A stretch of 64,000 bases of DNA from the NCBI RefSeq assembly GCF_048593235.1, contig NC_133617.1, forward strand, positions 524,376,958 to 524,440,957. Reading direction: 5' to 3'. Both the position numbers and the translations under genes were made by a program. Position 1 is the stretch's first letter; each line of letters opens with the position of its first letter. Below, piece after piece: positions 3,109 to 58,758 of the stretch. This DNA is from Sminthopsis crassicaudata (taxonomy: Eukaryota). Under the pieces are notes generated by a model that was given only the letters and a program-made list of their open reading frames with translations, had not been told where the DNA came from and ran no database searches.

Positions 3109-4073
3109 CTTTAAAAAGAAAAATAGTTGCTTTATTTCGGTCCAACACTTCCTTCCTATATTAAGTGCATCACCAACAAGGTGGACAAAGAAAGCACTGA
3201 TTATTGAATTAAATGAAGTTGAGAGGTTTTTAGATCACCTAGCTCAGAGTCACACATATAGCCTCTTCTAGTGTTTCCAAAATGAGGGTTGTGGAATGGT
3301 TCTAAAGGGGCCTTAGCCTAAAAGGTGTGGGATCAGTCTTGGACTTCTCTCTAATACAACCATCCAGCTTCTTTCCACATTGCTCTATTGGGCCATCTCC
3401 TATTGACAAATCTCCTAAGGAACTCCTGGGTTGTGTGTCACTGAGGGAGTACAATCTGACCTAAGCCCAGTAAATACTGTGGTTCAGGAACAGTGACTAG
3501 GGAGTAACTCATCCCGTTCTTTACTTTTCATTTATTAGTTGGAAAGAAAGTAGCATAGGATAAATAGGCATCAATGATTTGCAATAATATAACTCCACTC
3601 CCCTCAAAATCACCTATTTACAAACTTTCCTATTTTTTCATCTTTCCAGGGTATCAGGTCACCAATCTCTTTATCCCTGACTCTGTGTAAAACTGCCGTC
3701 TTCAAAGTTACCAATAATCCCTTAATTGGCAAATGTTTTAAAATTTTTATTTATTTATTTATTTTGTAACTTTTTTTTTTGACAATACATATGGGTGATC
3801 AATTTTTTACAACATTATCCCTTGCACTTCTGTTCTGAATTTTCCCCTCCTTCCCTCCACCCCCTCTCCTAGATGGCAGGCAGTCCCATATTTAATTGCC
3901 AAATTTGATCGTCTTTTTTTCAATCTTTATCTTCCTTGACTCGGAAGTATTTGATGCCGACGACTACCTTTGCTTTAGATACTCTCTCCTCTCTGCGCTG
4001 CAGTAACTATATAATGGTCTCTGCATAAGAGGAACATATTCCTCCGTGGAGTTTGGAGAAAGAGGACCGAGAG

Positions 4074-4076
<3 letters not shown>

Positions 4077-4130
<54 letters not shown>

Positions 4131-4141
4131 ATATTTATATA
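4077..4141. repeat. (TA)n microsatellite
   Basis: Long TA dinucleotide run with a few TT interruptions. Confidence 0.95.
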
Positions 4142-4329
4142 TAAGAGACCGTTTTTTCAAGAGATTAAGTGATTTCTCCAAGACTAGGCAATGCAAAGCT
4201 GAGAATAAAATCCGGGTCTCCTCATTCCCAGGCTGGCAAGTCCAACCTGGGTCCTTGGAAGAGAACAGCCGGGTTTGGGTGGGTGGGAGCGGGCCTTCAG
4301 TCTCTCCTGCCTCCTCAAGGGGGCAGCAT

Positions 4330-5210
4330 GGGACAACAGAAAGTACAGACTTCAGTCAAAGGGCGCAGATTCCAGTCCGCTCCAATTCACTTTCCGCATC
4401 TCAGTAACACGGGGGCGTCGGTCTAGCTGCCCTCCAGGGCTCTTTCCAGCTCACATCTATGATCCTATCACTGCTCCTGTTTAAGGAGATGGATCCCGTC
4501 CGTCGGAGGGGGTGCTTAGAGGGGGGGGGGGGCAAGTTCCCCAGAGAGACGAGAGGAAAAGACAAGAGGGTCCCTTACAACTTGGGGGGGAAGGGAGGAG
4601 GTCGAGGTGATGTGATTTACGTTAGGAAGTCTCTCTCAGCAGGGAGGGGGTGTGTGTGAGACACTTGTGTGAGTATATACATGTTCGCGTACTTGGGGCT
4701 CCTGTGTGGATGTAAATGAGACGGAGATGGGGTGGGGTGGGGCTCCGGCCGAAGCTGTGACGAAAACTCCTCCCGCGAGGCGTGGGGGCGTGGCCGACGC
4801 CTCGCATTCCTTCGTCCCCTCTCCTCCCTGTTCCCTCCCCCCTCTCCTCTAGGCCCGCTCCGCAGCCGATCGGGGTTCCCCCTCACCTGGGCGCTCTCCA
4901 CTTGCCCATTGACCATCAACAGGAAGACCGTGGGGTTGGCTGTAGCCATGTCTCTGCGAGGGCCGCGTTGCTAAAAGTCTCTAGAACGCCCCTTAGAGAT
5001 GACGGTGCGCTGGGTGGGACACACTTCCTTGGAACGGAGCCTTCGCGCCTGCAGATGCTCTCGCGGCTGCCTAGTTGGCAAGGACCTTGCGGGAGCATGC
5101 GTGATTGCTTGGTTTGAGTGAGCGGTGGAACGCGAAGTGGGCGTTTGGAAAAGAAGGAGAAGAGTACGGGGTCCAGGCTCTACTAAGGCCGGGTTATGGC
5201 AAAAGGGGTG
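4330..5210. promoter_or_regulatory. CpG island / promoter of B9D1
   Basis: Locally high GC and CpG density around B9D1 exon 1 in an AT-rich background; boundaries approximate. Confidence 0.8.
4887..4949 (-). CDS. B9D1: B9D1 coding exon 1
   Basis: ATG at 4949; MATANPTVFLLMVNGQVESAQ then CAG|gtgagg donor; 63 nt; lies in a CpG-rich region. Confidence 0.96.
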
Positions 5211-5295
5211 AGGGGCAGAGACACTATAGTCCGGCCCTCCAACAGTCTGAGGGACAGTGAACTGGCTCCCTATTTAAAAAGTGTGAGGACCACTG
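5170..5295 (-). mobile_element. Partial non-autonomous hAT (OC1/OposCharlie1-like) element
   Basis: Reverse complement begins CAGTGGTCCTCACACTTTTTAAATAGGGAGCCAGTTCACTGTCCCTCAGACTGTTGGAGGGCCGGACTATAGT and contains TTTTGCCATAACC, shared with the MITE at 45680-45859; second TIR not recognisable. Family name from memory. Confidence 0.7.
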
Positions 5296-7325
5296 CTAGA
5301 GCCACAGGATGCTTAATTTTTGTTGTAATCTGAGCCTTTTGGGCAGTCTGCTGAAACTTCTTAACCCATCTAGAAGTGGTTTCTAGAACTGCTTTTGCCA
5401 CTCCCTTCACTACCTCTCAGAGCCACACTTGCTATTCCTAACTACAGATCTGACCATACTAGTTTTCTCTGTCCTCGAACCTTCCTCTTTCCTTTAGGAC
5501 AAAATACAAACTGTCTTTTTGGAATTTTAAAATCGTTAATTACCCGGGTCCATTTTATTTTTATAAATATTTTGTCCTTTGTGCTCCTTTATGCAGCCTC
5601 TGTTCTAATCAAACAGGCTTATTCAGAACGTTGGGAGTTCATACCCTGCCTCTGGGTCTGCAAGAGCTATCCTTCTGGCCTAGGATGAACTCCCTTCTCA
5701 CTCTCAAACCGTAGAAGCTTTAACTCCATCCTGAACCCAGCATCTAGCCAGTGGTCCATCCTGATACCCTGTGTTAGTGCCAGCTAAACTTTGGCTGCCA
5801 GGATGCATTCCACAAGGTCTAGTTCACACCAACTTTTCCATAATGCATAGAAGGATATACTGGCTATTTAAGGCTTTTGGAACCGAAAATGAAATCCTTT
5901 TTCTGTGAATGTAAATGGACTGATCTCGCTTGTATAATTGGAGATTGGTCTAGGGTCCCAGTCCTTAGAACTGCATTCCTGGTAGATGATAAATGAACAA
6001 CATTCTCTGCCTCTTGTTCTCAGGCATGCATAAATGTAGGGGCCCTTTGTCTGACTTCAGAGTACTCACAAATACTCTATTTATTGCGAGGTAACAAAAA
6101 AACTTTTTAATTGACTATTGAATAGAAAAGAATCACTAAGAAATGTGTCACTATATTCTGGTGAATTTCAAGTGGGAAGGATTGACTACCCTGAACTATC
6201 AGATACCAGGGAAAAGGCGACACCAGATGTATCAAAATCGTCTGTGATCCTATCAGCAACATGAGACCTGGAGTCAGCGTTAACTGAGTCTGGTGAGGAA
6301 CTTACAGGGCCACCAAGCACCCTGCTAGACCAGACTTAGCAAGTGGGCTGACACATCTTTAGCCAAGACACCACATCCTGTAAGGAGCGAGGCCAGCTGA
6401 GCAAGAGAAGTGCTTCTTACATCTGCAATTAACTTGATGAAAGGAAAGGGCTTCCAGGACCAGAAATTTCACATTCCCAAGATGTTCTCAACATGAATGT
6501 TTCAATACTTTTGTGTTTCAAGCTTGAGCCCACTCTCCTCAGGGACCAAATTTGTGCTGAAGAGAAAGTGTGTTCCTTTCTCCCCACTTAGAAGATGTTT
6601 TTTGTAACTTCTATCCTTGCTGTATCTCCTCAGTAAAAGCAAATTTTGTAAAAGTTAACTGCTATCGACTGATTCATTGGAATTGGGGAAACACATCCAA
6701 TAGGGGATTTGAATAGTAGTATTATAATACCTCAACCCCTCAATGATATCCAAAGATAGAATCTTGAGAGGGAAACTCGCCATCTCCACTCTGGGGACAC
6801 CATAAGCCTATATGATGAGAATTTGGAGATTGAGCCCCAAAGGGATGCTTTACTTGTCAGAGAATTTGATACATTCACATACCAATCAATTAACAAATAT
6901 TTAATAAATAAGTACCTACTGTATACTATGACCTGCAATAGAGTTACCAGGAATCTAAGTATAAGGATATGAAATAATTCCTGCTCTCAAAGAACTTCCA
7001 TCCTTGTTGATCCTTCATTCCTCCAAGAGGACCAAAGATATCACAATGTCTTCACTTGCATGTGAATTGGATTTAAGAGGGGCAGAGCTAAACAAAGTCA
7101 GCAGCCTCACTATCTACCTTCAAGGATACTGGCCACCTTGCCAATTGGCCTTATTATGAACTCATTAGAATCTCTTTTGTCCTTGATCTGTCCTGCAGCC
7201 AAACTTTCCTAAATGTATTGTCTCTTCCAATTAGAGTTTAAGATCTTTGAGAGCAAAAAAAATATTCTTTTTGTTTTTTTTTCTGTTTGTGTCTCCTGTA
7301 TTTAGCATAGTGTTTGGCACATAGG

Positions 7326-8006: not shown

Positions 8007-9474
8007 ATCTCAAAAAGAAACCTAACCCATTTGATTAAAGAACTAAGAAACTAAATTATACTCTTAGTTTCTAATGCCTTCTCTCCCCAAATGACTTTGA
8101 GTATATTTTTTGTGTCTGCTTTTTCTGTGCATATGTTGCTTTCTTCAAATAGAATACAAACTCCTTGAAAGCAGTAAATATATATTTTTACATTCTTTTT
8201 ATTTCCTAGCATGTAGTGTAAGGTTTTGATATATTCTTATTGAGTAAATGAATCCCCCTCATTTTAAATTTGAGAAATTAAAGCCCAAAGGGATGAAATA
8301 CCTTGTCTATGTTATAAAGAGTAAAGCCAGGATTTTAAAATATATCCTTGACCTCCAAATTTAATACTTAATCTTTCTTTTAATTTTTCTTTTATTAATC
8401 ATGAATTTAGTAGATATCAACAATAATGAACATTTTAATATATAAGGTACAGAAAAAGCGATTGTACATTAATCTATGAATCTATTACATATACAGATTG
8501 ATTTTTTTTTTAAGTTTACAGGATGTCCCAAGAGGCTGAATATAGTTTTAAGTTACAAAATGTACAGTTTTTTGGGATACCCTGTATATTAAATTTAACA
8601 TGAAAGTACCATCTCTGTCCTGCTTAACTGTGGATTCTTGTAAACTTCCTTCTGTTTTTTCTGTGTAATTTTTAATTGATACTCTTTATTTGCTTCTTTT
8701 TTTGCATCATCATCACTACTCATCCACTTCTCTCCATTTCCCTCAAATTAAACCCCTTCCTTGTGACAAATATATACAATTAAAGCAAATTCACATAATC
8801 CTATGCTTTTTTTTGCCATACCATGCTGCCTCTCCAAAGTAAACAGCATGATGATTAGAAGACCAAGAATTGAGGCAATAATAATAGCTTACTCTGTGCC
8901 AGATATTATGCTAAGTTCTGTACATTTGATCCTTACAACTGTGAGGAAGGTTCTATTATTGTCTGTTTTACTGATGAGGAAAATAAGGGAAACAAAGTTT
9001 AAGTGATTTGTCTAGAGTCAGATAGAAGGGTCTGAAGTTGGATTTGAATTCAGGTCTTCCTGTCTTCAGACTTAGCACTTTTCATAACTATGGTACCACC
9101 TAGCAAGGAAATCCACCCCAAACCTTGCCGGCAGGGTCTATTATAGATTTCTGATTATATGTATGGAATTTGTTTTTCTTTTTTTCCTTTCCAATGGGGG
9201 AGAAGGAAAGGAAAGAAAATATTTGTTAATTGAAAATAATTTTATTTTTAAAAAACCCAAAATTTCCATGGTTCTAAGTTATATTCATCTGAAGTATGTG
9301 ATTCTATAGCTCTATTACTTTGAGATTTATCTTGAGCTTAGGAAAATATCAGTGATCTCTTGATACTTCCTGTTTTGAGGTCAGTGTGATATTTTTTTAA
9401 CTATGCTGAGTTATTTATGTCAATCCTTTTTTTCCCACAGATTTTTCAAATAATGTACCAGTGAACCAGATGTT

Positions 9475-9480
9475 TTTATT
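9475..9480 (-). terminator. Candidate polyadenylation signal of the pseudo-protease gene
   Basis: First canonical AATAAA on the minus strand downstream of the stop codon at 10413 (about 0.93 kb 3' UTR). Confidence 0.45.
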
Positions 9481-10412
9481 TGCATGAATAAATATAGATG
9501 TAGAGATGCAGGTTTCCTCTTATATTGGGGGGAAGTAACATTTGGGGTGAATAGTTGGAATGGGGGGTATTGTTTTTCATCACCCCTTTTTCCTTTAGCC
9601 TAGGGTCAGGGTTAGAAGGGATGTGCAAAAAGAATTATTTCAGTGTCCCCCGACTTTCTCCAGAACGACCTATGAGATCAAGAAAGTGATGTCATTTGAT
9701 TAAATTGAGGCAGAATCCTCAATCTCATTCAGAATGGAGACTGATGAATAGCTCAAAATCTTCTGATGCCTCCAGCTTTTCTGGGATCCTGTCTTTAGGC
9801 ATCTAGGAGCTTTCAAAGGTAAGCAGAAAACCAAGCAAACTTGAAGACTGATAAGTCTCAGTATGTCACGATACACAGGTATGAGAGGCCAACCACATTA
9901 TAGAGGTTAGAGACCACCCTACCTTACTAAATAGCTGGAAATTTTCAGATCAGAGTAACCATATGATCATATAGCAAAGATATAAACTTTTTTTAAAGGG
10001 AAAAATGTACTTTTGTGAACTAGAAAGGATCAAGAACCTCCAGCTTTTTCCCATGATTCCCACTAGCATGGATTAATTGATCAGATTAAATAGATAATGA
10101 TTGTGCTCCTTAGATAAGATAACATTGCCTATATTTATATAACTAGCAAGTGCCAGAGGCACAGAAAGACCTGGCTTCAGATATTTGTTTCATGAAATGG
10201 TTCTAGGATTCTACCAAGAATAGTAGGATGATGAGTTTGGAGTTTTGAAGATTTAAATTGGGGGAAAGTAGAACTTTGCAATAACAAAGCTTGGGTGACA
10301 TCAGGAAGAAAAAGCATAGAATAGAAGGGCAAACCCAAAGGGGCAGTACAATATGGCAATATGAGGGGGAGCATGAGGGAGAGTGGACCAAAGAGAAAGG
10401 TCACTAAAACCT

Positions 10413-10613
10413 TCACTTGCTTTTCAAGTTGGCTTTAGAAAAATCCTTGACAACTCTGACACTAGGAAATTTGTCCTGGATCCAGGTGCTGATGGGATGG
10501 ATTGGGATGTAAACTTCAGGGAGGCCATTAGAAGAGCAAGGTCCCCAGGTGATGACCCCTAGTAGCACCCACTGACCAGCATATACGCAAAGGAGAGGAC
10601 TACCATCTGCCAC
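10413..10613 (-). CDS. Pseudo-protease exon 5 (Ser195 region, C-terminus)
   Basis: ctctctttttag|GTGGCAGATGGTAGTCCT; VADGSPLLC aligns with GDSGGPLVC; W..LGVITWG.C...PEVY....ISTWI matches the S1A C-terminal pattern; TGA at 10415-10413. Confidence 0.9.
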   Translation of the reverse strand: MADGSPLLCVYAGQWVLLGVITWGPCSSNGLPEVYIPIHPISTWIQDKFPSVRVVKDFSKANLKSK

Positions 10614-13600
10614 CTAAAAAGAGAGAGGAGAGTCACTGAGTCAATGTGCAGCATGCATGGGGAGAAGTGGGGAGGAAGGGGAGATCAAAACAAATTGGGG
10701 GACAGGCTTTGAGCCTGCATGAGCAGAGGGGAGACAGCTCTAGGCAATGAGTCCTAACCGTGATCTCTGAAGAACCAAGAGGAGGGCCAGTGCACTGAGT
10801 CCCATTTGGCATGCTTATCTCTGGACTGGGGCAGTCAGGCTGAAGTTGGAAGATGACTTGACAATTGGTTGGAGATATGAGAGGCATTTTAGCACTCCAC
10901 AGCTCATCAGGTGGGATGTTAGGGTCTGGGGAAAGGTAAGAGAAGAGAAGCACAGGGTCAGGGTTGGAAGGGATGTACAAGGAGAAAAAAAATGATTTCA
11001 GCTCCCATCCTCAAGTCCAGTTCTCAGTAGCTTTAAGGAGAGATAGAAAAATCTTGGAGAGAGAAAAAAGTTGAATAATCCTTCACTTCTATATTGGTCA
11101 GGAACACCTCTGAGAAGGCCTTGGGTTATTTAGCTTCTACCCTTCTCCATTCACAGTATAGGGATAGGCTGGTCAAAAGAGGAGGGTGTGATCTAAAAGT
11201 CCCCACTGAGTGACATTAACTTCCACTGTGACAGCAACATCTCACCAGCTTGAGTTCCACCTCCATTTTGAAGTTAATGAGTGCACTTCCTTTAAAAAAA
11301 AAAAAAAATTATTTTACTTAAAAAAACAGGAAGAAAAAAAAAAAGAAAAAGAAAAAATTGAGTATACCTTCTTTAGACCATTGCTCCCTTACTTCTGGCT
11401 TCAATTTCTATATCTTGTGCCTTCACTAAGGTCTCTAAAAATAATGCCACCCCTGTTCATAACATATTTTATACTTTTTCAAAGTACTTCCCATCCATTA
11501 TCTCATTTAATTTTCATAACATTTCTGTAAAGCATTTATTCTTATTTTCAGAAAAAGCTAAGGCCTATGAGAGATTTGCTAAAGGACAAACGAGGCTAAA
11601 GATTATCTAGTTCAATAACCACATCTTAAAGATAAAGAAACGGAAACCCAGAAATGACAAATCATTTACTTGAAGTTGCACAGTGAATTAGTAAAGGCAG
11701 AGGGGACAAGAATCCATGTCTCCCAATACCTCATCTAGTGTTCTATAACAACCTCCTGTGTCTGTGAAACTTGCCAAGAACCAACTGTATCTTCCCCTTA
11801 CACTCTTAGCCCAAAAGAAATGAGAGATGAGTAAAATAAGAGAAGCCACCCCAAATGTTCATATGGTCGATTTGTGTCCAACCTGTGGCAGAGCATTCCG
11901 AGCTCATATTGGTCCGATTAGTCATAGTCAGACACACTATGATGTCATTTTGGTCCTCTTAAAGAATGAAGAACAAGAATCAACCAACCTCCCTTCTGGG
12001 GTCCCAGTGTGGTCCCAACCCCTGCAATCCAACTCCAACTCTAACGTCTCAGTCATGTGATCTCCTGACCTCATCAATTGTCCTTACCAAAATCTGCTTT
12101 AAATCCCTGAGCCCAGCAGATCCTCTTCCAAGGGAAAAAATCGGGGCCCTTGATGAGGGATGTGGGGTAGATAGAGTTGCTGATAGAAGGGGGCTGTGTT
12201 AACTTCACCAGAACCAGACTTCCAGGCCTATTATCCACAAGGCTCCTGGGAACTGGGATCAGCTCCTCAACAACAGACAAGGCTTCAGCATAGTTCAGAT
12301 TCAGCCGTCGCTGACCCATGCTCACAGTGAAATGGGAAAGAGGAAAGCTGTCAGGAAGAGGCAGATAGTGAGAAAGGCAGATTAACAAACAGAACAGTGA
12401 TGCTGTCCAAACCCCCCTAAGCTCACCCCTCCTCCTGATTTCCTGACTTCTGTTGAGGATATTACCATTCTTCCAATCATGTAGGATCCTAACCATATAT
12501 CCTCCACTTTCCACTCTTAAACTCCGTCCCTCTTACACAGTCAGTCTCAGTATTGCCTATTTCATTTTCCTGATATCTCTTGCATGTCTCCTTTTTACTC
12601 ATGGCACTGGTTCAGGTGCTCATCATCTTTGCTTCCTGTGAATTATTGGGAATAATCTTTTAATTGGCTCTCCCTTGATCTATTTTCTCCCTTTTCTAAT
12701 TCATCCTTCACATAGCTGACAAATGGATATCCCTAAAGCTTCAGGGGCTCCCCCGGGGTCTTTAAAATAAAACACAAATTCTTGTTTGTCATTTAAAGCC
12801 CTTTATAAGCTGGTTTTAGTTTTTTTCCTCGATTTCTGCACATTATTCTTAAGTAGTCTATATATTTCACTCAGACTGATCCTCAAATGGCATCTGATGT
12901 AGATTCCTCATACTTGATATCCTTTCTAAACTTTTCAACAATCTCTTTTCCAAATCACCAATGCTCTCCTTCCTGACATTGATTTTTTGGAATCCCTAGC
13001 TACATGCAAGATTCTACCAAATACCAGCTTTTTTACAGATCCTTTTCTAATCCCCAATTATTAGAGATTCCATCCCCAATTACTACACAGTTTTGTATTT
13101 ATTTTATCTGTATACATGGTCCCATCAATAGAATGTATGTTCCTTAAGGGGGAAAGGGTAGGGAATGGAACTGCTTTTCTCTGGGTAACACACAGCACTC
13201 AGCACATAACAATGTGTAATAATAAATCATGCTAATTAACTGATCTAAATTATCTCAAAGAATCTGAGGCCTATNNNNNNNNNNNNNNNNNNNNNNNNNN
13301 NNNNNNNNNNNNNNNNNNNNNNNNNNNNNNNNNNNNNNNNNNNNNNNNNNNNNNNNNNNNNNNNNNNNNNNNNNNNNNNNNNNNNNNNNNNNNNNNNNNN
13401 NNNNNNNNNNNNNNNNNNNNNNCTGTGATAAGACTTGATACTAGAATCAAAATTGCTGTTGTAGCTGACTGTTGGTGGGAGCAATTGTGATCAACTAAAT
13501 GAATATTCCTACCAGGCTTCCTTTTCTAACTATTTCCTTGGCACTCACCTTCCAAAGCAATCGCTTATAGTTATCACACACTCTGAAGAGATGAGAGCTC

Positions 13601-15694
13601 CTTCACAGCGATACCTATCATCCAGGAAAATACTGGCTAGCCAGGGCCATGAACTAGGAATGGCTTTGTTGGTAAGGACTTCAGTGGAACCATATCCTAA
13701 TCCAGAAAGAACAAAGCATTAGGGGATCTATTGCTTAGGTACTTGAGGAGAGAGCTTCAGGAAAGTTATCCTCAGGCTGCTTTAAAAGTAAAGCTTTGGG
13801 GGGGGGGGGGGGTTGGGGTCTTGGTCACTTGAGGAGAGAAACATCTGAGGTCCGGTCCAAAGGCCTTGGGAGAGCAAAGTTCATATATAGTTATATCATG
13901 AAGACAAATGTAATTTCTTGGGACGAGAGGGGACTGTATCTCCCCACAATACCCTGCCTTTTTCATCATGGCATATCATTCATTCGTTTATGCATCATTC
14001 TTTTGTTAATCTTCAAATATTTATCATTCTTTTATTTGTTAATTAATTTATTCCTTAACAATAAATTCAAACATTCTATAAGCATCTATGCTGCACACCC
14101 CCATGCAAGTGCTATAGGGAATACAATTGTATAAGACATATCCTTGCCTTTAAGAATATGTAATATACTTAGGTAGATAGGGCACAGAAGGTATAAATGC
14201 AATTAAAATTCAAATGGGGGCAAATGAAGAGTACACACATTATAGATCATGAGGTCAAATGATTTTGGGCTAGGACAGTCAAGAAAACTTCATAAAAAAG
14301 TAGGGAACTTGTGACAGCTAGATGGCACAATAGTTAGGGCACCAACTCTGAAGTCAGTAGGACCTGAATTCAAATGTGCCCTCAGACACTTCACATTTCC
14401 TAGCTGTGTGACCATGGGCAAGTCACTTAATCCCAATTGCCTTAGGGAAAAAAAAGTAGGGAATTTAATACAAACGTGTGAGGATATAGAATTTCTATAT
14501 GTGGAGATGGGGAAAGAAGAGGAAAGTATTTTAATGAGAAGAATATGAGGCAAGGCATAGAGGAAGAAATCAGAAGATGTGCTTTAAGACTGAGGAATAA
14601 CTTGCTGAAACAGAATATTTTCATAGGAAGAAGACCTTGAGTGACAGAATGAAGCATTTAGATTTTATTCAACTGAGAATGATGAACCACATTTTAGGAG
14701 AATTTATCTGGTGGTAATTATTCTGCAACGGATAGAATATTGACCATGGAATCAAGAAGGCCTGATTTCAAATACCATCTCTATTTTGTGACCTTGGGTA
14801 AATTACTTAATCCCCAAATTGCCTTTAGACAGTTTCCTAAAACAAAATCATAGTTCTTTCAGACATTCATTCAGTAATAAGGTTGAGGTTGGTAAAAATG
14901 AGAAAGAGGTAAGAGACACTGGAGATAGCAAGAGCAAAAAGGAGATTTATGGCAAAAATCTAGGTATTAAATTGTTTTGACAGAATTTTCAATTTTCTTT
15001 TTTGGTGTTTTTAAATTTTTTTTTTCTCATTTTCTAAACTTTTTTTTTTTTTTTTTAAACTAAGGAAATCCACCTTCTCTCCTTTCCACCTCTTCCCAAC
15101 CCCTCATGGAAAAACAGAGAAAACAAAACCCTTTTGATAAATATATATACTCAAACAAAGAAATTCCCATGTTAAATATGTCAAAAATAAATAAATAAAA
15201 ATCTCAGTCTTCATCTGAATTCTTCACTAGGCTTTAGATTATGAAAATTTTGGGAATTATTTTCCCTCTGAGTTTTGGTTGTTTTGGTTTCTTTGTTTTT
15301 AATACTTGCACTACCTATTTTCAGGACTGTTGTTAGGAAACTAATTTGTAAATTGTAAAACACTGTATGAATATAAGTATCTAGTACTGTAATAGAAAAG
15401 TGATCATGGAGAAGGGATATAGGACCAGGACTAAAACATTCCAAGCAAATATATATACTCTAAAGAAATCAGAAATCCCTGAGAATGTCTGTGGAATTGT
15501 ATGGAATTACGTTGCACAAAACTCTGGAATTTGCTATTCTACCAATCTCCTCAGACAGAAATCTTAGAATCATAGCTAATTTCTTCCATTATAACATAAA
15601 CAATTTCTGCTTTTCCTCTCTTTCTACCCTTTGATGAGAAGTCACATTTATAGATCACTTCTTCCAACTTTAAGACCACCAGTGTTCTTCTTAG

Positions 15695-15776
<82 letters not shown>

Positions 15777-16963
15777 GCCACAGTCTCCTTGAGCTGTTCT
15801 ACCTCAGTTTCCCTGCACTAGTTTCCCTCATTGTCCTGACTGAGTTTCCCTGAATTGTTCTATCTCAGTTTCCTTAACTGTTCTGCCTCAGTCCCCTAAG
15901 TCATAAAACCCCCCTGGTTCATTAAGACTGAGGACCATTTGCTCTAAGGTTATAAATTGTCCATGGGAGATGAGGAGCAGATCAGACTTCCTGACTCCTA
16001 GTTCCTTCTGCCTCCAAGAATTTATGACACTGCCCCTCTAAAATATTCCAAAAGATAAGTCTATCTCGGATACTTCACTGACATCTTTACTTCTGTTATT
16101 CAAACATTCTGACTCTGGCTTTTAGTAAAAATTTACAACATCCTTTCCCCCCCCCCACCCCCATCCTGAAAAGGCTTCTAATTTTCCCGATCTTTTTCCT
16201 TTCCTTTGTCTGAAGAGCTATAAAAGTGTTTATTGTTCCCCCATTCATTACTGGATACTTTGAGACGAGAGTCCTGTCCAGTCAATTAAACTCTCCAATT
16301 AATAAAATATTAAAAAAAACTCTCTAATCTCTATCTTGCCTCAGTTTCTCTGGCATTACACTCTCTCTCTCTGTTTTCCTCCCTCCTTCTTTTTCTCCCT
16401 CTCTCTCTTTCTCCTTCCTTCTTCCCTTCCCTCCCTCTTTCTTTCCCATTTGATCCTCATAATAATCCTGAAAAAAAATATATATTATCTTTATGAAAAA
16501 AAATTGAGGCAAATAGGGATAAAGTGGTGCACTCAATCTGCCTATTCTAAGGTCAGTTTTTAATTTAGGTCTTCTTGCTTTCATGTCCAGTATTCTGTTT
16601 TCTGCATTACTTAGGTCCTTAAGTACTTTTGTACTTTGTTATCTCTATTTTTCTACCTTATTACTCTTGCAGGACTCCAAAAGGAAATTGAATTAATTCC
16701 CAATTTAAATGTGAATCTGATTCTCAAATAAGATTGCAAACTCTGGGGTTCTGACCCTAAGGCCTTCAGCACTTCCATTATAATCCATCCATTATAATCC
16801 TGGCAGGATCATTAGCATCAGCTTTCTGCTGTACACAATTTCGCTTCTAAGAGCTCCTGTATCTTGTCCCTCAGGGTCCCATACTCATCACCCAACCTCC
16901 CATACCTGGCAACAGCAACAACAGCAGCAGCGACAACAGGAGTACATATAGTACAGCTCCCAT
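10413..16963 (-). CDS. Secreted catalytically inactive trypsin-like (S1A) serine protease homolog, 5 coding exons, 277 aa (gene span)
   Basis: join(16963-16906,13696-13549,12347-12088,10925-10759,10613-10413) = 834 nt, no internal stop, all GT-AG, phases 1-2-1-0. Protein: MGAVLYVLLLSLLLLLLLPGYGSTEVLTNKAIPSSWPWLASIFLDDRYRCEGALISSECVITISDCFGSFPLSHFTVSMGQRRLNLNYAEALSVVEELIPVPRSLVDNRPGSLVLVKLTQPPSISNSIYPTSLIKGPDFFPWKRICWAQGFKADFDPNIPPDELWSAKMPLISPTNCQVIFQLQPDCPSPEISMPNGTQCTGPPLGSSEITVADGSPLLCVYAGQWVLLGVITWGPCSSNGLPEVYIPIHPISTWIQDKFPSVRVVKDFSKANLKSK. Confidence 0.88.
10759..10925 (-). CDS. Pseudo-protease exon 4
   Basis: ctttccccag|AC CCT ... ATC ACG|gttagg; 167 nt, phase 1/0; LWSAKMPLISPTNC resembles LQEVKVPLI...C; contains C168 and C182 equivalents. 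Confidence 0.85.
11835..11990 (+). mobile_element. 3' end of an RTE-clade LINE (or RTE-derived SINE) in pseudo-protease intron 3
   Basis: Encodes CPTCGRAFRAHIGPISHSQTH, the C-terminal C2H2-like motif typical of RTE ORFs, followed by a short 3' tail; boundaries approximate. Confidence 0.75.
12088..12347 (-). CDS. Pseudo-protease exon 3 (Asp102 region)
   Basis: cttcctgacag|C TTT ... TTT G|gtaagg; 260 nt, phase 2/1; SLVLVKL aligns with DIALLKL; CWAQGF aligns with CWVTGW. Confidence 0.88.
13275..13422. other. Assembly gap (N run) inside pseudo-protease intron 2
   Basis: 148 N; the flanking exons join in frame without an extra exon. Confidence 1.
13549..13696 (-). CDS. Pseudo-protease exon 2 (His57 region)
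   Basis: tttgttctttctggattag|GA TAT ... GGA AG|gtgagt; 148 nt, phase 1/2; SWPWLASI..CEGALISSECVITISDCF aligns with WPWQASI..CGGSLIS..WVLTAAHCF. Not in the ORF track. Confidence 0.9.
14308..14450 (+). mobile_element. Marsupial CORE-SINE (WSINE1-like)
   Basis: cagctagatggcacaatagttagggcacc...gggcaagtcacttaatcccaattgcc + A tail; flanked by the direct repeat aaaaaagtagggaa. Confidence 0.8.
15697..15770. repeat. (CT)n microsatellite (resumes after the LTR at 16361)
   Basis: CT run on both sides of the LTR at 15771-16360. Confidence 0.95.
15771..16360 (+). mobile_element. Solo ERV LTR, copy A (in pseudo-protease intron 1, antisense to the gene)
   Basis: (c/t)gttatgcca...tggcattaca termini, TATAAAA and AATAAA, inserted in (CT)n; near-identical reverse complement at 19282-19846. 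Confidence 0.9.
16906..16963 (-). CDS. Pseudo-protease coding exon 1 (signal peptide)
   Basis: ATG GGA ... MGAVLYVLLLSLLLLLLLP + G|gtatgg; 58 nt, phase 1, joins exon 2 in frame; Leu-rich hydrophobic core. Confidence 0.8.
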
Positions 16964-45859: not shown

Positions 45860-46419
45860 TTCTAAATCAATGCCTAAACAAATGCTTTATATTCCTAAGC
45901 TAATTTCCCAGGCCCCTTAAGAAATACCCTCTTTCACTACGAGCAAGAATCCCAATGCTAACAGAGGAGCCCACTAACAACTTCAGGGAAAGGAGAAATA
46001 TTTAAGACTGAGAGAAACTATTCTTATTTAGGTTTTCCATCCCGCCCACATTCGGGAGGCTGCGGGCTACACCACTGCCTTTTGGATGCCTATCTCAGCT
46101 ATCACACACTGTTACTGATGCTAACGCACCCGTACACTACGGAAGTACAGAGAGAGAAACGTGCTGTACCTCCCATGGCGTTGATCTGAGAGTCAAATAG
46201 ATCTACGTTCTAATGCAGTTATGCGACTGTCACACGTTGTCTTGGGGCTTCCTCTGTAAAATGATGGATCTAGATCGAATGATCCTCTATGGACTGGGCC
46301 AGCCACCAATATTCTCCCATTTCATTTCTCACATAATTAGCAATTAGCATCTCATATTAGGGAGAAGTTGAAACAGAAGAAATGGTCCAGGACGAACTCA
46401 ACTCCAGAACCCTGGTTCC

Positions 46420-54270
<7,851 letters not shown>

Positions 54271-56199: not shown

Positions 56200-56447
56200 T
56201 CAGATACGACGAATTTTCATCTCAGTACGCTTAAGGGAATAATAGAATCCTTTCCACTGGGCCCAGTTGATACCATTGGCATAGGAAACATGGTTCCCCC
56301 CCAAATAGAAGCCATTGAGATTGGCAAAGTGACAACTCCGGAACCAGAAGGCTCCAGATGAGAGTACTGCACAGTTCTGCACAAATTGGTCCTGGTCCTG
56401 GTCAAAGGTGGAGAATTTCTGGCCACTGTGGTAGGAAAGAGAGTCAC
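56200..56447 (-). CDS. MFAP4: MFAP4 exon 6
   Basis: cttcccag|GTGAC; [15 protein letters not shown]...[14 protein letters not shown]. Confidence 0.97.
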
Positions 56448-58758
56448 CTGGGAAGAAGGGAAGAGAGGAGAGTACAGGTTGGAGAATTGATTGTAAAGAT
56501 TGAATGGCTGTGGGTGGAGAGTGACTGCAGTAGAATATGACCAGAACTATATGGCACATTGCGGGCAAGGGAAGATAGCTGCCTCCCCCACCCTTGCCAG
56601 ATGTTAGACAAATGTGCTTCTGAAATTAAGGGAAACATCTGTGATGGGGAGAGGGAAGCTGAAGACTTGGAGCAAAACGGACTAGCTTCCTTTTGGTGCC
56701 AAGGCTGAGGCTGAAGTTTGGCCCTGCTTCAGCTGTGGATTCTGCCAGATGTGGGAGGGGAAGGTGGGTGGGACCTCAGAGGGAATGTGAGGGCCTCAGG
56801 CTTGGGGACCAGTCTGGTAGTGCCAGCGTCTAATCACCTCTCCTTCCCCAGGGCCCTCATCTCCAAATGACCAAAACTGGTGAATGGCGGGGAAATAGCC
56901 AAGAGGAATGGAGACAGAGTGGAGTATTACCTGCTCCCCCATCTTCAAAACCAGTTACATAGAGAGTGTAGCCATCTTCCTCTGCGTTGATAGCATTGGG
57001 GGAAATAGAGAATTCTGTGTACTTGGCATGGGCTGTATTGTTCTCAAAGTCTTCCAAGTCTACACGCAGCTCATACTTTTGCTTCAGAGTGAGGAGGTGG
57101 ATATTCTGCAGCCCTAGAAGGCCAAGGGAGGTTAGGAGCCCGTCAGTCTCCCAATGCTCCCACCCCAGAATTCAAGTCATCAGTCCCTGGCTGTCTCTCA
57201 GCCTCCACACCCTTGCTAGACGTCTGCCCTCCAGGCCCCGGTTCCTTTCACCTTACCTAGCCAGTACTCCCCATCAGCTCGACCAAAACCCAGCTTGTAG
57301 TCATTCCAGCCTCTGAAGAAGCTGACAGAACCATTGAATCTCTTCTGGAAAACCTAGAGCCAAGAAAGTAGGAAACTGAACTGGGTAAAGCCTGATGGAG
57401 GTAGAGAGTATGAGTTTTGTTTGAAATTGATCCTGGTATCCCTTGAATCAATTTTTGTTTTCAGGTTTTCCTTCACTTACTAGTCTCTCCTCAATCAGCA
57501 TGTTCTTGTTACCCACTTTCTCTGATCCTCCTTTTTATAGAATCCAAAAGTCAACCAAAAGTGATCTTAGAGCTCATCTAGTACAATACTCATTTTATAG
57601 ATGGAGGCATAGGGATCTAAAGCAATCAATCATACAGCTTAGATGGCTGTCTAGTCTCCCTGCCTTGCGACTGCTTAGTAGCACTCTTATGTGTCTTACC
57701 GTCCATTTGCCCTCATCAGTGTTCATATCACAGAAGACTGGCACGGGAACACTAGGTCCTGACGGATAGATAAGGTAAACCCCATCAGCTCGGTAACCTT
57801 GCGCATAGATGTCATCACAGTCCAGGGGCTGCTGAGCGCAGGGTTTTTCCAGAGCTAAGAGAAAGAGAAGAAGGAACATCAGTTATTCTCTGGGGTGAAT
57901 GAATTCTCGACTCCCATCCTGATTTTCTACAGGGGTGGGAAATCTTGCTGTTTTATAGATCCAAGAAGCTAAAAGAGATCATGTTTTCCAAACTTGCCAT
58001 TTTGCTGACATACCGAGGTACAAAGTTCCTCAGCAAGTCAGGGACAGAACTGGGATTTGCATTTACGTCTCCTGATTGCCTGTTTAGTGCACTATCTCTC
58101 TATTCTCACAACTAACCTCTCTACCCCTAACTAGATGCTTTTGATGTCCTTGGTTCAGAACTCTCTCCACCCATCCTATCCCTCTGATTCAAAGGAATGC
58201 TTTTCCCGGCATCACCTTAGCCCCTTCTGTCAAGGGATTGGGGTGTGAATGAACTTACCGTCTCCCCGGATTCCAGAAGACTGAGAGGAGCAGCAGGGAG
58301 TATGAAGGAAGAGGAAGAATAGCAACAGAGCGACCTGGAGAGCATAAGAGAGTCACATATACAGATCCCCGGAAGTTTCCAACATCAGCCCTAAAGTCAA
58401 TTTGGTGTATTAAGATTCTTACTTGAGAGACAGTATTTTAGAATCCCCCCCCCCAAATTTCCTTCCTTTGACTAATTTCCAAAAATCTAATACCCCTGAC
58501 CAACTTAATAGTGCCCCTACATGATAAGGCCTCCTTCCATCCCAAATCATAATGGAAAACAACTACTTTCCATTCCTTAGTTTTATCTCCCTCCAGCATC
58601 CTCTGCATCCTCTCAGTTTATTGTACCCACATAAAAAGGTAGTCATTTCTAATTGTGTAAGAGTCTCCCTTGGGTGACAGATTCATGCTAGGCCGTAATA
58701 GTGGCCTGTGTGGTAGGAGATTCCTGTCTGGGGCCAAGTTTTCTCCCAATACCTTCAT
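56200..58758 (-). CDS. MFAP4: Microfibril-associated glycoprotein 4, 6 coding exons, 254 aa (gene span)
   Basis: join(58758-58753,58334-58259,57854-57700,57353-57257,57113-56931,56447-56200) = 765 nt in frame; signal peptide, RGD motif and fibrinogen C-terminal domain. Confidence 0.97.
56931..57113 (-). CDS. MFAP4: MFAP4 exon 5
   Basis: tag|GGCTGCAG; [31 protein letters not shown]...FEDGGA; G|gtaata. Confidence 0.97.
57257..57353 (-). CDS. MFAP4: MFAP4 exon 4
   Basis: [32 protein letters not shown]; G|gtaagg. Confidence 0.97.
57700..57854 (-). CDS. MFAP4: MFAP4 exon 3
   Basis: [21 protein letters not shown]...[10 protein letters not shown]; ACG|gtaaga. Confidence 0.97.
58259..58334 (-). 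CDS. MFAP4: MFAP4 exon 2 (signal peptide and RGD)
   Basis: ctctccag|[25 protein letters not shown] + G|gtaagt. Confidence 0.93.
58753..58758 (-). CDS. MFAP4: MFAP4 exon 1 coding part (MK)
   Basis: gacaacATGAAG|gtattg; the 2-codon first exon matches the mammalian MFAP4 structure as I recall it. Confidence 0.85.

What the first reader, a model, noticed from the sequence alone, without database searches (positions are those of the whole stretch)
10413..16963. Intact 5-exon gene for a secreted trypsin-fold pseudo-protease lacking the whole catalytic triad
Seen in sequence: five exons splice with canonical GT-AG sites into an uninterrupted 834-nt ORF (277 aa) with a Leu-rich signal peptide and S1A scaffold motifs (WPW, C42/C58, C136/C201, C168/C182, WG, P.VY, WI). 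Established: intron phases 1-2-1-0, with His, Asp and Ser regions on exons 2, 3 and 5, are the classical trypsin/kallikrein/tryptase-family layout. By eye (chymotrypsin numbering) His57 is Asp (TAAHC to TISDC), Asp102 is Ser (DIALLKL to SLVLVKL) and Ser195 is Asp (GDSGGP to VADGSP). Inference: frame, splice sites and fold cysteines are preserved despite heavy divergence, which argues for a selected non-catalytic secreted protein (binding, decoy or scaffold) rather than a decaying pseudogene. I do not recognise it as a named gene. Reproductive-tract, sperm, milk or pouch/immune roles are untested possibilities.
Basis: partly seen in the sequence, partly recalled or inferred. Interest (0 to 1): 0.92.

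Follow-up and report, generated by a model that had tools for sequence, protein, structure and literature searches.

The report
Conserved secreted trypsin-fold pseudo-protease gene
This is a real, intact five-exon gene of the fat-tailed dunnart for a secreted trypsin-like protein that cannot cut anything; evolution has kept it next to the B9D1 gene in marsupials and many placental mammals, it carries only an automatic name, and nobody has studied it.

Summary
On the minus strand, five GT-AG exons (16963-16906, 13696-13549, 12347-12088, 10925-10759, 10613-10413; phases 1-2-1-0) splice into an 834-nt ORF. Its 277-aa product is identical to NCBI's automatic model XP_074137813.1, "serine protease 33-like", of Sminthopsis crassicaudata.

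The N gap (13275-13422) lies inside intron 2 and removes no coding sequence.

The protein is an S1A trypsin domain nearest to prostasin and tryptases. It has no His57, Asp102 or Ser195, no IVGG activation site, Glu in place of Gly226, and no Cys191, but it has a new invariant Cys.

Intact orthologues with the same exon sizes sit just upstream of B9D1 in opossum, wallaby, glider, wombat, Dromiciops, Antechinus, cats, horses, rhinos, pig, bats, mole, tree shrew and sloth. All of them lack the triad, so the loss predates the marsupial-placental split.

Omega is 0.44 (LRT against neutrality p=3e-20), so a pseudogene is excluded.

RNA support is indirect. Fourteen dunnart runs hold exons 4 and 5 without intron 4, and intronless cDNA contigs exist in placentals. 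The junction-read step failed.

Verdict: a selected, non-catalytic secreted binding protein, and a new, unnamed member of the pseudo-protease kind. Its partner and tissue are unknown. The "PRSS33-like" label is a misnomer.

The parts
16906..16963 (-). Exon 1 (58 nt). ATG at 16963-16961, G at -3 and +4. Encodes the Leu-rich signal peptide and ends in phase 1.
   Evidence: No in-frame upstream ATG before a stop. The same 55-58 nt exon is found in wallaby, glider, wombat and Dromiciops. The AF2 model shows an N-terminal helix at residues 2-16.
13549..13696 (-). Exon 2 (148 nt). Holds the WPW motif, the invariant D-x-RYRCEG loop (Cys42 equivalent, Glu in place of Gly43), the dasyurid-specific Cys59, and Asp65 at the His57 position followed by Cys58. 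No R|IVGG activation site.
   Evidence: Pfam Trypsin E=6e-4 on the exon alone. Alignment columns; codon coordinates.
13275..13422 (.). Assembly gap (N), wholly inside intron 2 (13548-12348).
   Evidence: The protein is collinear with orthologues across the exon 2/3 junction.
12088..12347 (-). Exon 3 (260 nt). Holds Ser112 at the Asp102 position (GSLVLVKL), Ser in place of Cys122, Cys136 and the CWAQGF motif. An alternative in-frame acceptor at 12320 is not supported by the orthologues.
   Evidence: Prostasin and tryptase hits on the exon alone. Exon 3 is 260 nt in 8 other species. Exhaustive HMMER search.
10759..10925 (-). Exon 4 (167 nt). Holds the conserved DFDPxxPPxEL autolysis-loop segment, Cys168, the family-specific invariant Cys187 (QPDC), Cys182 and an NGT glycosylation sequon.
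10413..10613 (-). Exon 5 (201 nt including TGA 10415-10413). Starts with VADGSP (Asp214 in place of the nucleophile). Then Cys201, TWGPC (Cys220 kept, Cys191 lost), LPEVY (Glu244 in place of Gly226), WI and a basic tail.
   Evidence: Pfam Trypsin E=1.8e-4 and plasma kallikrein E=6e-7 on the exon alone. Residue columns.
4617..4949 (-). B9D1 first coding exon (MATANPTVFLLMVNGQVESAQ...), 5.4 kb downstream on the same strand. This is the positional anchor for orthology.
   Evidence: ORF, recognised by eye. B9-C2 genes lie directly downstream of the orthologue in leopard, rhino, sloth and opossum.

Best explanation
The locus is a functional gene for a secreted, permanently non-catalytic member of the prostasin/tryptase branch of S1A serine proteases. 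Shown: it has a signal peptide and a complete trypsin domain, and it has lost every element needed for proteolysis. These are His57, Asp102, the Ser195 nucleophile, the R|IVGG activation cleavage site with its Asp194 partner (under the intron-anchored alignment), an open S1 pocket (Gly226->Glu, invariant) and the Cys191-Cys220 bridge. It belongs to an unnamed orthologous family fixed immediately upstream of B9D1 in marsupials and in placentals of at least six orders. Every member lacks the triad, so the inactivation happened in the therian stem lineage, and the gene has been kept under purifying selection since. Inferred: the protein works by binding rather than cutting. The segments that line the former substrate cleft carry family-specific residues that are invariant across marsupials and placentals. 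These segments are the 37-41 loop D-x-RYRCEG, the 60-loop GS-x-P, the autolysis loop D-x-DP-xx-PP, V-x-DG-x-P, TWGPC and LPEVY. The new invariant Cys187 in the 170-loop probably pairs with the orphaned Cys220. I therefore propose that the remodelled, acid-rich pseudo-active-site face is a recognition surface for an extracellular protein partner, as in HGF beta-chain, haptoglobin or insect serine-protease homologues. The partner and the tissue are unknown.
For: Gene structure and product identity with XP_074137813.1. Trypsin domain: Pfam E=2e-20; profile against prostasin 1.6e-32 and tryptases about 1e-31. The AF2 model has pLDDT 80.6 and pTM 0.79, and Foldseek matches tryptase and prostasin at E about 1e-16 and TM 0.65-0.75. 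Across 21 family sequences, the His57 position is N/S/D/K, the Asp102 position is G/S/A, the nucleophile is absent, Gly43->Glu, Gly226->Glu and Cys187 are invariant, and Cys191 is lost. Orthologues are found in marsupials and placentals. B9D1 lies directly downstream in four other loci, and bat models are even fused to B9D1. Exons 3 and 4 are 260 and 167 nt in all nine species threaded. Pairwise dN/dS is 0.19-0.64 with every upper bootstrap limit below 1. GY+F3X4 omega is 0.44, with 2dlnL=85 against omega=1, p=3e-20; for marsupials only, omega is 0.54, p=1e-9. Dunnart-unique changes are 15.5 synonymous to 15.5 non-synonymous, against a neutral expectation of 1:3.4, p about 1e-3. Expression evidence: 14 dunnart runs from 5 studies hold 0.63-0.65 of the sampled words of exon5+intron4+exon4. 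That is the value expected (308/483=0.64) if both exons are present without intron 4, and four other runs hold none. An intronless 976-nt contig codes a 274-aa orthologue, and intronless pig and bat contigs exist.
Against: No junction-spanning reads were seen, because the single read-laying run was rejected by a filter, so splicing in the dunnart is inferred from word shares only. Omega of 0.44-0.54 indicates only moderate constraint. The binding mechanism, the Cys187-Cys220 bond and the signal-peptide cleavage are inferences; model coordinates could not be inspected. No orthologue appeared among annotated primate, rodent, ruminant or canid proteins, and tiger, lion and cheetah models are only 138-140 aa, so the gene may be dispensable in some lineages. 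There is no canonical poly(A) signal within 930 nt of the stop. Tissue and partner are unknown.
Confidence: 0.85

Rival explanations
1. It is a decaying unprocessed pseudogene of a tryptase/prostasin-like protease whose open frame survives by chance.
For: All catalytic residues are gone and the sequence is only 22-27% identical to active relatives. Omega is not very low (0.44-0.54). No orthologue is annotated in primates or rodents.
Against: The frame, all eight splice sites and the exon lengths are intact in nine species threaded here, spanning the marsupial-placental split. Neutrality is rejected at p=3e-20. There are 64 invariant columns across the family. Antechinus has the same length at 93% identity. 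Spliced transcripts exist in placentals.
Confidence: 0.02
2. It is the dunnart orthologue of PRSS33 or tryptase gamma, as the automatic names say, that is, an ordinary named protease gene.
For: NCBI names are 'serine protease 33-like' and 'tryptase gamma-like'. PRSS33 and tryptase gamma appear among the structural neighbours (ranks 24 and 28).
Against: PRSS33 is not the best structural match and shares only 25% identity. The locus sits between B9D1 and MAPK7/MFAP4. From my own knowledge, that corresponds to human 17p11.2, not the 16p13.3 tryptase/PRSS33 cluster. PRSS33 and TPSG1 are catalytically competent, whereas this family never is.
Confidence: 0.03
3. It is still an enzyme that uses unconventional chemistry. 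For example, the invariant Asp214, Glu51 and Glu244 could form a new acidic catalytic or metal-binding centre.
For: Three acidic residues invariant across 21 sequences replace small residues around the former active site. That is stronger conservation than a mere scaffold would need.
Against: There is no precedent for such a mechanism in the S1A fold. The oxyanion-hole and activation machinery are gone. Glu226 should fill the S1 pocket.
Confidence: 0.05
4. It is not an independent gene but an upstream, alternative 5' part of the B9D1 transcription unit, and the protease-like ORF has no function of its own.
For: It lies on the same strand, 1-5 kb upstream of B9D1, in every species examined. NCBI bat models are named 'B9 domain-containing protein 1 isoform X1-X6' although they encode the protease-like protein. 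There is no nearby poly(A) signal in the dunnart.
Against: The ORF has its own start, signal peptide and stop, and it is under purifying selection at the codon level. Stand-alone intronless cDNA contigs end shortly after the stop. B9D1 has its own CpG-rich promoter region in the window.
Confidence: 0.05

Closest known systems
Prostasin (PRSS8) and mast-cell tryptases (TPSAB1/TPSB2), the tryptase/prostasin branch of S1A
   Same: These are the best sequence and fold matches. They share the WPWQ(A/V)S motif, Cys42-58, Cys136-201 and Cys168-182, and the five-exon layout with phases 1-2-1-0.
   Different: Identity is only 22-27%. This protein has no triad, no activation cleavage site, no Cys122 tether, no Cys191, Glu at 226, no GPI or transmembrane tail, and a different chromosomal neighbourhood.
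PRSS33 / tryptase gamma (the automatic names given to this family)
   Same: Same S1A branch and similar length.
   Different: They are not the closest match. Those proteins are active proteases located elsewhere in the genome (my knowledge). The name reflects best-hit transfer only.
Mammalian testis-type inactive proteases of the same branch (inactive serine protease 45; PRSS54, PRSS37)
   Same: They are secreted or membrane S1A homologues that have lost catalytic residues. PRSS45 is among the top structural neighbours (ranks 3, 8 and 23).
   Different: They are different loci and different orthologous groups. Identity is about 20-24%. Those proteins are annotated in mouse and/or human, whereas this family is not found there.
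Classical vertebrate pseudo-proteases that act by binding: HGF/MSP beta-chain, haptoglobin, azurocidin, protein Z
   Same: A trypsin fold kept as a binding module after triad loss. The zymogen HGF-beta/MET complex is among the fold hits (rank 39). The proposed use of the remodelled cleft and activation domain as an interface follows the HGF-beta precedent (my knowledge).
   Different: There is no close sequence relationship. Several of those proteins still need activation cleavage or retain part of the triad. This family has lost all three residues and the activation switch, and it is a stand-alone domain.

Membership tests
Peptidase family S1A (chymotrypsin/trypsin fold, Pfam PF00089) | Full-length match to the trypsin domain profile and the two-beta-barrel fold | tested here: met
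   Pfam E=2e-20, profile positions 6-220 of 220. The AF2 model matches tryptase and prostasin at TM 0.65-0.75, probability 1.00.
Active S1A serine peptidase | Catalytic triad His57, Asp102, Ser195 | tested here: not met
   Asp65, Ser112 and Asp214 (or a deletion) stand at these positions in the dunnart. Across 21 family members the positions are N/S/D/K, G/S/A and no Ser.
Active S1A serine peptidase | Zymogen activation: basic residue|I-V-G-G N-terminus and an Asp194 salt bridge | tested here: not met
   The N-terminal segment is G-S-T-E-V-L-T-N-K, with no basic-IVGG motif in any member. Position 194 is Ala or Ser under the ungapped alignment. HMMER instead keeps Asp194 and deletes Ser195.
Active S1A serine peptidase | Open S1 pocket (Gly216/Gly226) and the Cys191-Cys220 bridge | tested here: not met
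   Gly226 is Glu244 in 21 of 21 members. The Cys191 column is V/T/M. Cys220 is kept and a new invariant Cys187 appears.
Tryptase/prostasin-type gene architecture | Five coding exons, intron phases 1-2-1-0, with the His, Asp and Ser regions on exons 2, 3 and 5 | tested here: met
   for this family. That this is the canonical layout is from my own knowledge and was not tested on a canonical gene here.
PRSS33 orthologous group | Best reciprocal similarity and shared synteny with PRSS33 | tested here: not met
   PRSS33 ranks 24th among reviewed structures, at 25% identity. The neighbours here are B9D1, MAPK7 and MFAP4. The location of PRSS33 elsewhere is from my knowledge.
Unnamed therian 'B9D1-adjacent' pseudo-protease family (defined here) | Position directly upstream of B9D1 on the same strand; exons 3/4 of 260/167 nt; motifs RYRCEG, CWAQGF, V-x-DG-x-P, TWGPC, LPEVY | tested here: met
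   Window. Other species. Motif columns.
Non-catalytic binding pseudo-protease (works like HGF-beta or haptoglobin) | A demonstrated protein partner bound through the protease-like domain | not testable with these tools
   Inference only, from family-specific invariant residues concentrated in the cleft-lining loops.

The most novel reading that the evidence does not exclude
This is the dunnart copy of an unrecognised, therian-wide extracellular protein family. The family is a stand-alone tryptase-like domain that lost catalysis, activation and its S1 pocket before marsupials and placentals split. It rewired a disulfide and evolved an invariant acidic pseudo-active site as a ligand-binding surface. 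It has escaped study because annotated human and mouse proteomes lack it. If so, it is a signalling, adaptor or decoy protein with an unknown partner that the standard biomedical model species cannot reveal.
Probability: 0.35. Interest if true: 0.65.

Novelty: new member of a known kind. Interest (0 to 1): 0.5.

Why it matters
Pseudo-proteases are a known kind, but each characterised one (HGF, haptoglobin, azurocidin, the sperm PRSS proteins) turned out to have a specific, important binding role. This is a whole orthologous family that has been conserved since before the marsupial-placental split, at a fixed genomic address. It carries a misleading automatic name, I found no literature on it, and I found no annotated copy in human or mouse. 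The family offers a natural example of how a protease fold is converted into a binding module: triad, activation switch, S1 pocket and a disulfide all changed and were then frozen. It also marks a lineage-specific loss that could be relevant to differences between model and non-model mammals. For annotation, the 'PRSS33-like', 'tryptase gamma-like' and 'B9D1 isoform' labels should be replaced.

Tried and rejected
1. Read laying on window:10350-13760 with four runs was rejected by a filter at 11482-11528 and still counted. No junction reads could therefore be obtained. I substituted the indirect word-share test.

2. The first AF2 model, from the 12-sequence family alignment, was poor (pLDDT 54) and I did not use it. 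A 40-sequence alignment with added polyserase domains gave pLDDT 80.6. Model coordinates are not exposed, so I could not measure the proposed Cys187-Cys237 bond.

3. The third homologous-protein search at a looser E-value added only one unrelated protein. The word index did not bring in active paralogues, so I could not build a family tree with PRSS33, TPSG1 or PRSS8.

4. The look-up of encoding contigs found no record for the pig, Tupaia and Hipposideros isoforms, so these are missing from the codon analysis.

5. Literature searches for the automatic names, accessions, the SRA run and the gene neighbourhood returned nothing relevant.

6. The protein atlas gave only generic trypsin clusters.

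7. I rejected the alternative acceptor at 12320 (268-aa product) because exon 3 is 260 nt in all orthologues.

8. A tblastn self-search found no paralogous protease exons elsewhere in the window.

9. I did not type the spliced protein into any tool. Full-length searches became possible only after the database returned it as P0028.

10. The Logan-only fragments P0006, P0015, P0019, P0023 and P0042 look like ORFs on unspliced genomic contigs of unidentified placentals. I did not use them as evidence.

Full report
**What is in the sequence.** The feature lies on the minus strand. I located the boundaries by motif search and spliced them in a script. This gives five exons:
- exon 1: 16963-16906
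- exon 2: 13696-13549
- exon 3: 12347-12088
- exon 4: 10925-10759
- exon 5: 10613-10413

All introns are GT..AG and the phases are 1-2-1-0. An AG 27 nt further in (12320) would also keep the frame and give 268 aa. Because exon 3 is exactly 260 nt in eight other species, 12347 is the conserved acceptor. No in-frame ATG lies upstream of 16963 before a stop.

**The assembly gap.** The gap at 13275-13422 is inside intron 2. The peptide across the exon 2/3 junction aligns without loss to every orthologue, so the gap hides no coding sequence and does not affect the frame. Continuity of the two sides is supported by the identical exon order in five other marsupial loci. It is not supported by reads.

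**Identity of the protein.** An exhaustive HMMER search with exon 3 returned a 276-aa wallaby protein, which led to P0028. P0028 is NCBI XP_074137813.1, 'serine protease 33-like' of Sminthopsis crassicaudata, and it is identical over all 277 residues to the window's product.

**Domain and fold.**
- Pfam Trypsin matches the whole domain at E=2e-20.
- Single exons already hit Trypsin, prostasin, tryptase and kallikrein.
- A family profile finds prostasin (1.6e-32) and tryptases first among solved structures.
- An AlphaFold2 model from a 40-sequence alignment reached pLDDT 80.6 and pTM 0.79.
- Foldseek matched that model to tryptase and prostasin (E about 1e-16, TM 0.65-0.75, 22-27% identity).
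- Among reviewed proteins, the model matched the tryptase, PRSS27, PRSS38, PRSS41, PRSS45 and prostasin group.

**Loss of the catalytic machinery.** In the 40-sequence alignment the dunnart residues are as follows.
- His57 position: Asp65. Across the family this position is N, S, D or K.
- Asp102 position: Ser112. It is Ser in marsupials and Gly or Ala in placentals.
- Nucleophile: absent. The invariant motif is V-[AS]-D-G-x-P.
  - HMMER and MAFFT align the Asp with Asp194 and delete Ser195.
  - The ungapped alignment makes it Ser195->Asp and Asp194->Ala/Ser.
  - I prefer the ungapped reading because exon 5 starts exactly at this motif. As I recall for trypsin, kallikrein and tryptase genes, the phase-0 intron lies immediately before G-D-S-G-G-P. 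I did not test that recollection here.

Other changes are invariant across the family:
- Gly43->Glu
- Trp141->Phe (CWAQGF)
- Gly226->Glu
- Ser214->Thr
- loss of Cys191 with Cys220 retained
- a new Cys (residue 187) in an insertion of the 170-loop
- loss of Cys122

There is no basic residue followed by IVGG after the signal peptide. The dunnart's ninth cysteine (Cys59, Trp in other species) and its Asp65 are shared with Antechinus. They are therefore dasyurid traits, not sequencing errors.

**Orthologues and position.** Database searches show the family in two groups.
- Marsupials: Sminthopsis, Antechinus, Notamacropus, Petaurus, Trichosurus, Vombatus, Dromiciops and Monodelphis.
- Placentals: cats, equids, rhinoceroses, pig and warthog, rhinolophoid bats, a mole, a tree shrew and a sloth.

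Marsupial-placental identity is about 45-49%. In the window the next gene downstream on the same strand is B9D1 (exon 1 at 4949, recognised by eye). MAPK7 and MFAP4 follow on the other side. A B9-C2 gene lies directly downstream of the orthologue in leopard, black rhino, sloth and opossum. Bat gene models are even labelled as B9D1 isoforms. This is positional orthology across therians.

No member was returned from primates, rodents, ruminants, canids, monotremes or non-mammals. That is absence of evidence from annotated proteins, not proof of loss. The sloth's exon 5 is intact, although its longest NCBI model reads through the exon 4 donor.

**Selection.** I threaded each protein exactly onto its locus to recover the CDS.
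- Pairwise Nei-Gojobori dN/dS over 249 gap-free codons is 0.19-0.64, and every bootstrap upper limit is below 1.
- A GY+F3X4 codon model gives omega 0.44. Fixing omega at 1 costs 42.5 log-likelihood units (p=3e-20).
- For six marsupials alone, omega is 0.54 (p=1e-9).
- At codons where the other five marsupials agree, the dunnart shows 15.5 synonymous and 15.5 non-synonymous changes. The neutral expectation is 1:3.4 (p about 1e-3).

Constraint is moderate but unambiguous, also on the dunnart branch. The pseudogene reading is excluded.

**Expression.** The indirect evidence is this.
- For the stretch exon5-intron4-exon4, 14 dunnart runs from five studies all hold 0.63-0.65 of the sampled 31-mers. 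The expected value is 0.64 if both exons are present but intron 4 and its boundaries are not.
- Four larger runs from one study hold 0.88-1.00 of that stretch, which looks unspliced or DNA-like. Four other runs hold none.
- In the longer stretch, five runs cluster at 0.17-0.18, close to the 0.19 expected for exons 3-5 alone.
- In placentals, a 976-nt intronless contig codes a complete 274-aa orthologue. Pig and bat contigs of 1.2-1.4 kb code 288-303-aa forms.
- The tissue is unknown because the run labels are coded.

**Mechanism.** Shown: this is a secreted-type, selectively maintained trypsin-fold protein that cannot be a conventional serine protease and cannot be activated like one. Inferred: it acts by binding. 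The family-specific invariant residues lie mostly in the segments that, in the standard S1A numbering, line the substrate cleft and form the activation domain. These are the 37-41 loop, the 60-loop, the autolysis loop, residues 192-198, 214-220 and 225-228. They include three new acidic residues (Glu43, Asp at 194/195, Glu226) and a probable replacement disulfide, Cys187-Cys220. By analogy with HGF beta-chain, haptoglobin and insect serine-protease homologues (my knowledge), I propose that this remodelled face recognises an extracellular partner. A basic C-terminal tail is conserved in charge in both clades and may add a second interaction. I put 0.85 on 'functional non-catalytic secreted protein' and about 0.5 on the specific interface.

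**Comparison and novelty.** The protein belongs to the S1A fold family, tryptase/prostasin branch. It fails every test for an active peptidase and fails the tests for PRSS33 orthology, so the automatic name misleads. Full-text searches for the names, accessions and neighbourhood found no paper on it. It is therefore a new, unnamed member (indeed a whole orthologous family) of the known kind 'pseudo-protease'. It is not a new kind of system, and it is already present in databases as a prediction. The earlier scan note on the same stretch (s1-153610: loss of the activation switch and S1 pocket, odd cysteine count) agrees with what I found. I score interest at 0.5: solid and worth a bench follow-up, but not a surprise in principle.

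Noticed in passing
window 4617-4949 (-), and the GC-rich block 4001-6000: First coding exon of B9D1 (MATANPTVFLLMVNGQVESAQ...), with a GC-rich promoter-like region. The rest of B9D1 runs off the low end of the window.
   Followed up: partly
window 49513-51421 (+) and the GC-rich block 46001-48000: Large MAPK7 (ERK5) exons, matching human MAPK7 structures at E=1.8e-195, preceded by a CpG-island-like region (GC 0.56).
   Followed up: yes
window 56200-57879 (-): MFAP4 exons (fibrinogen C domain; MFAP4 structures at E=9e-51). The order B9D1, pseudo-protease, MAPK7, MFAP4 matches the human 17p11.2 neighbourhood as I recall it.
   Followed up: yes
P0040, P0060, P0061, P0066-P0069 (Hipposideros models): Bat gene models named 'B9 domain-containing protein 1 isoform X..' actually encode the pseudo-protease with a divergent C-terminus. 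This suggests read-through or chimeric transcripts between the two tandem genes, or annotation fusion.
   Followed up: no
runs X3 and X4 against window 10413-13274 and 10413-10925: Two small RNA-like runs hold 0.54-0.62 of the intron-rich 2.9-kb stretch but only the exon-only share (0.63) of exon5-intron4-exon4. Introns 2 and 3 seem to be represented while intron 4 is not. This could be intron retention, an overlapping transcript or repeat-derived words; it is unexplained.
   Followed up: no
window 8400-10412 (-): No AATAAA or ATTAAA within 930 nt downstream of the stop codon; the first is at 9480. Either the 3' UTR is long, or a non-canonical signal or read-through toward B9D1 is used.
   Followed up: partly
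P0119, P0121, P0122 (tiger, cheetah, lion): Several big-cat models of this gene are only 138-140 aa, whereas leopard, clouded leopard and domestic cat have 277 aa. This may be lineage-specific damage or an annotation artefact.
   Followed up: no
window 15694-15772 and about 14310-14440: A roughly 75-nt (CT)n microsatellite and a marsupial SINE-like element lie inside intron 1. None of these overlap coding sequence.
   Followed up: no
L008 9627-9845 (sloth): The sloth's exon 5 is intact (VADG..., TWAPC, LPEVY), although both NCBI sloth isoforms seen here omit it. The sloth gene is probably complete and mis-modelled.
   Followed up: yes
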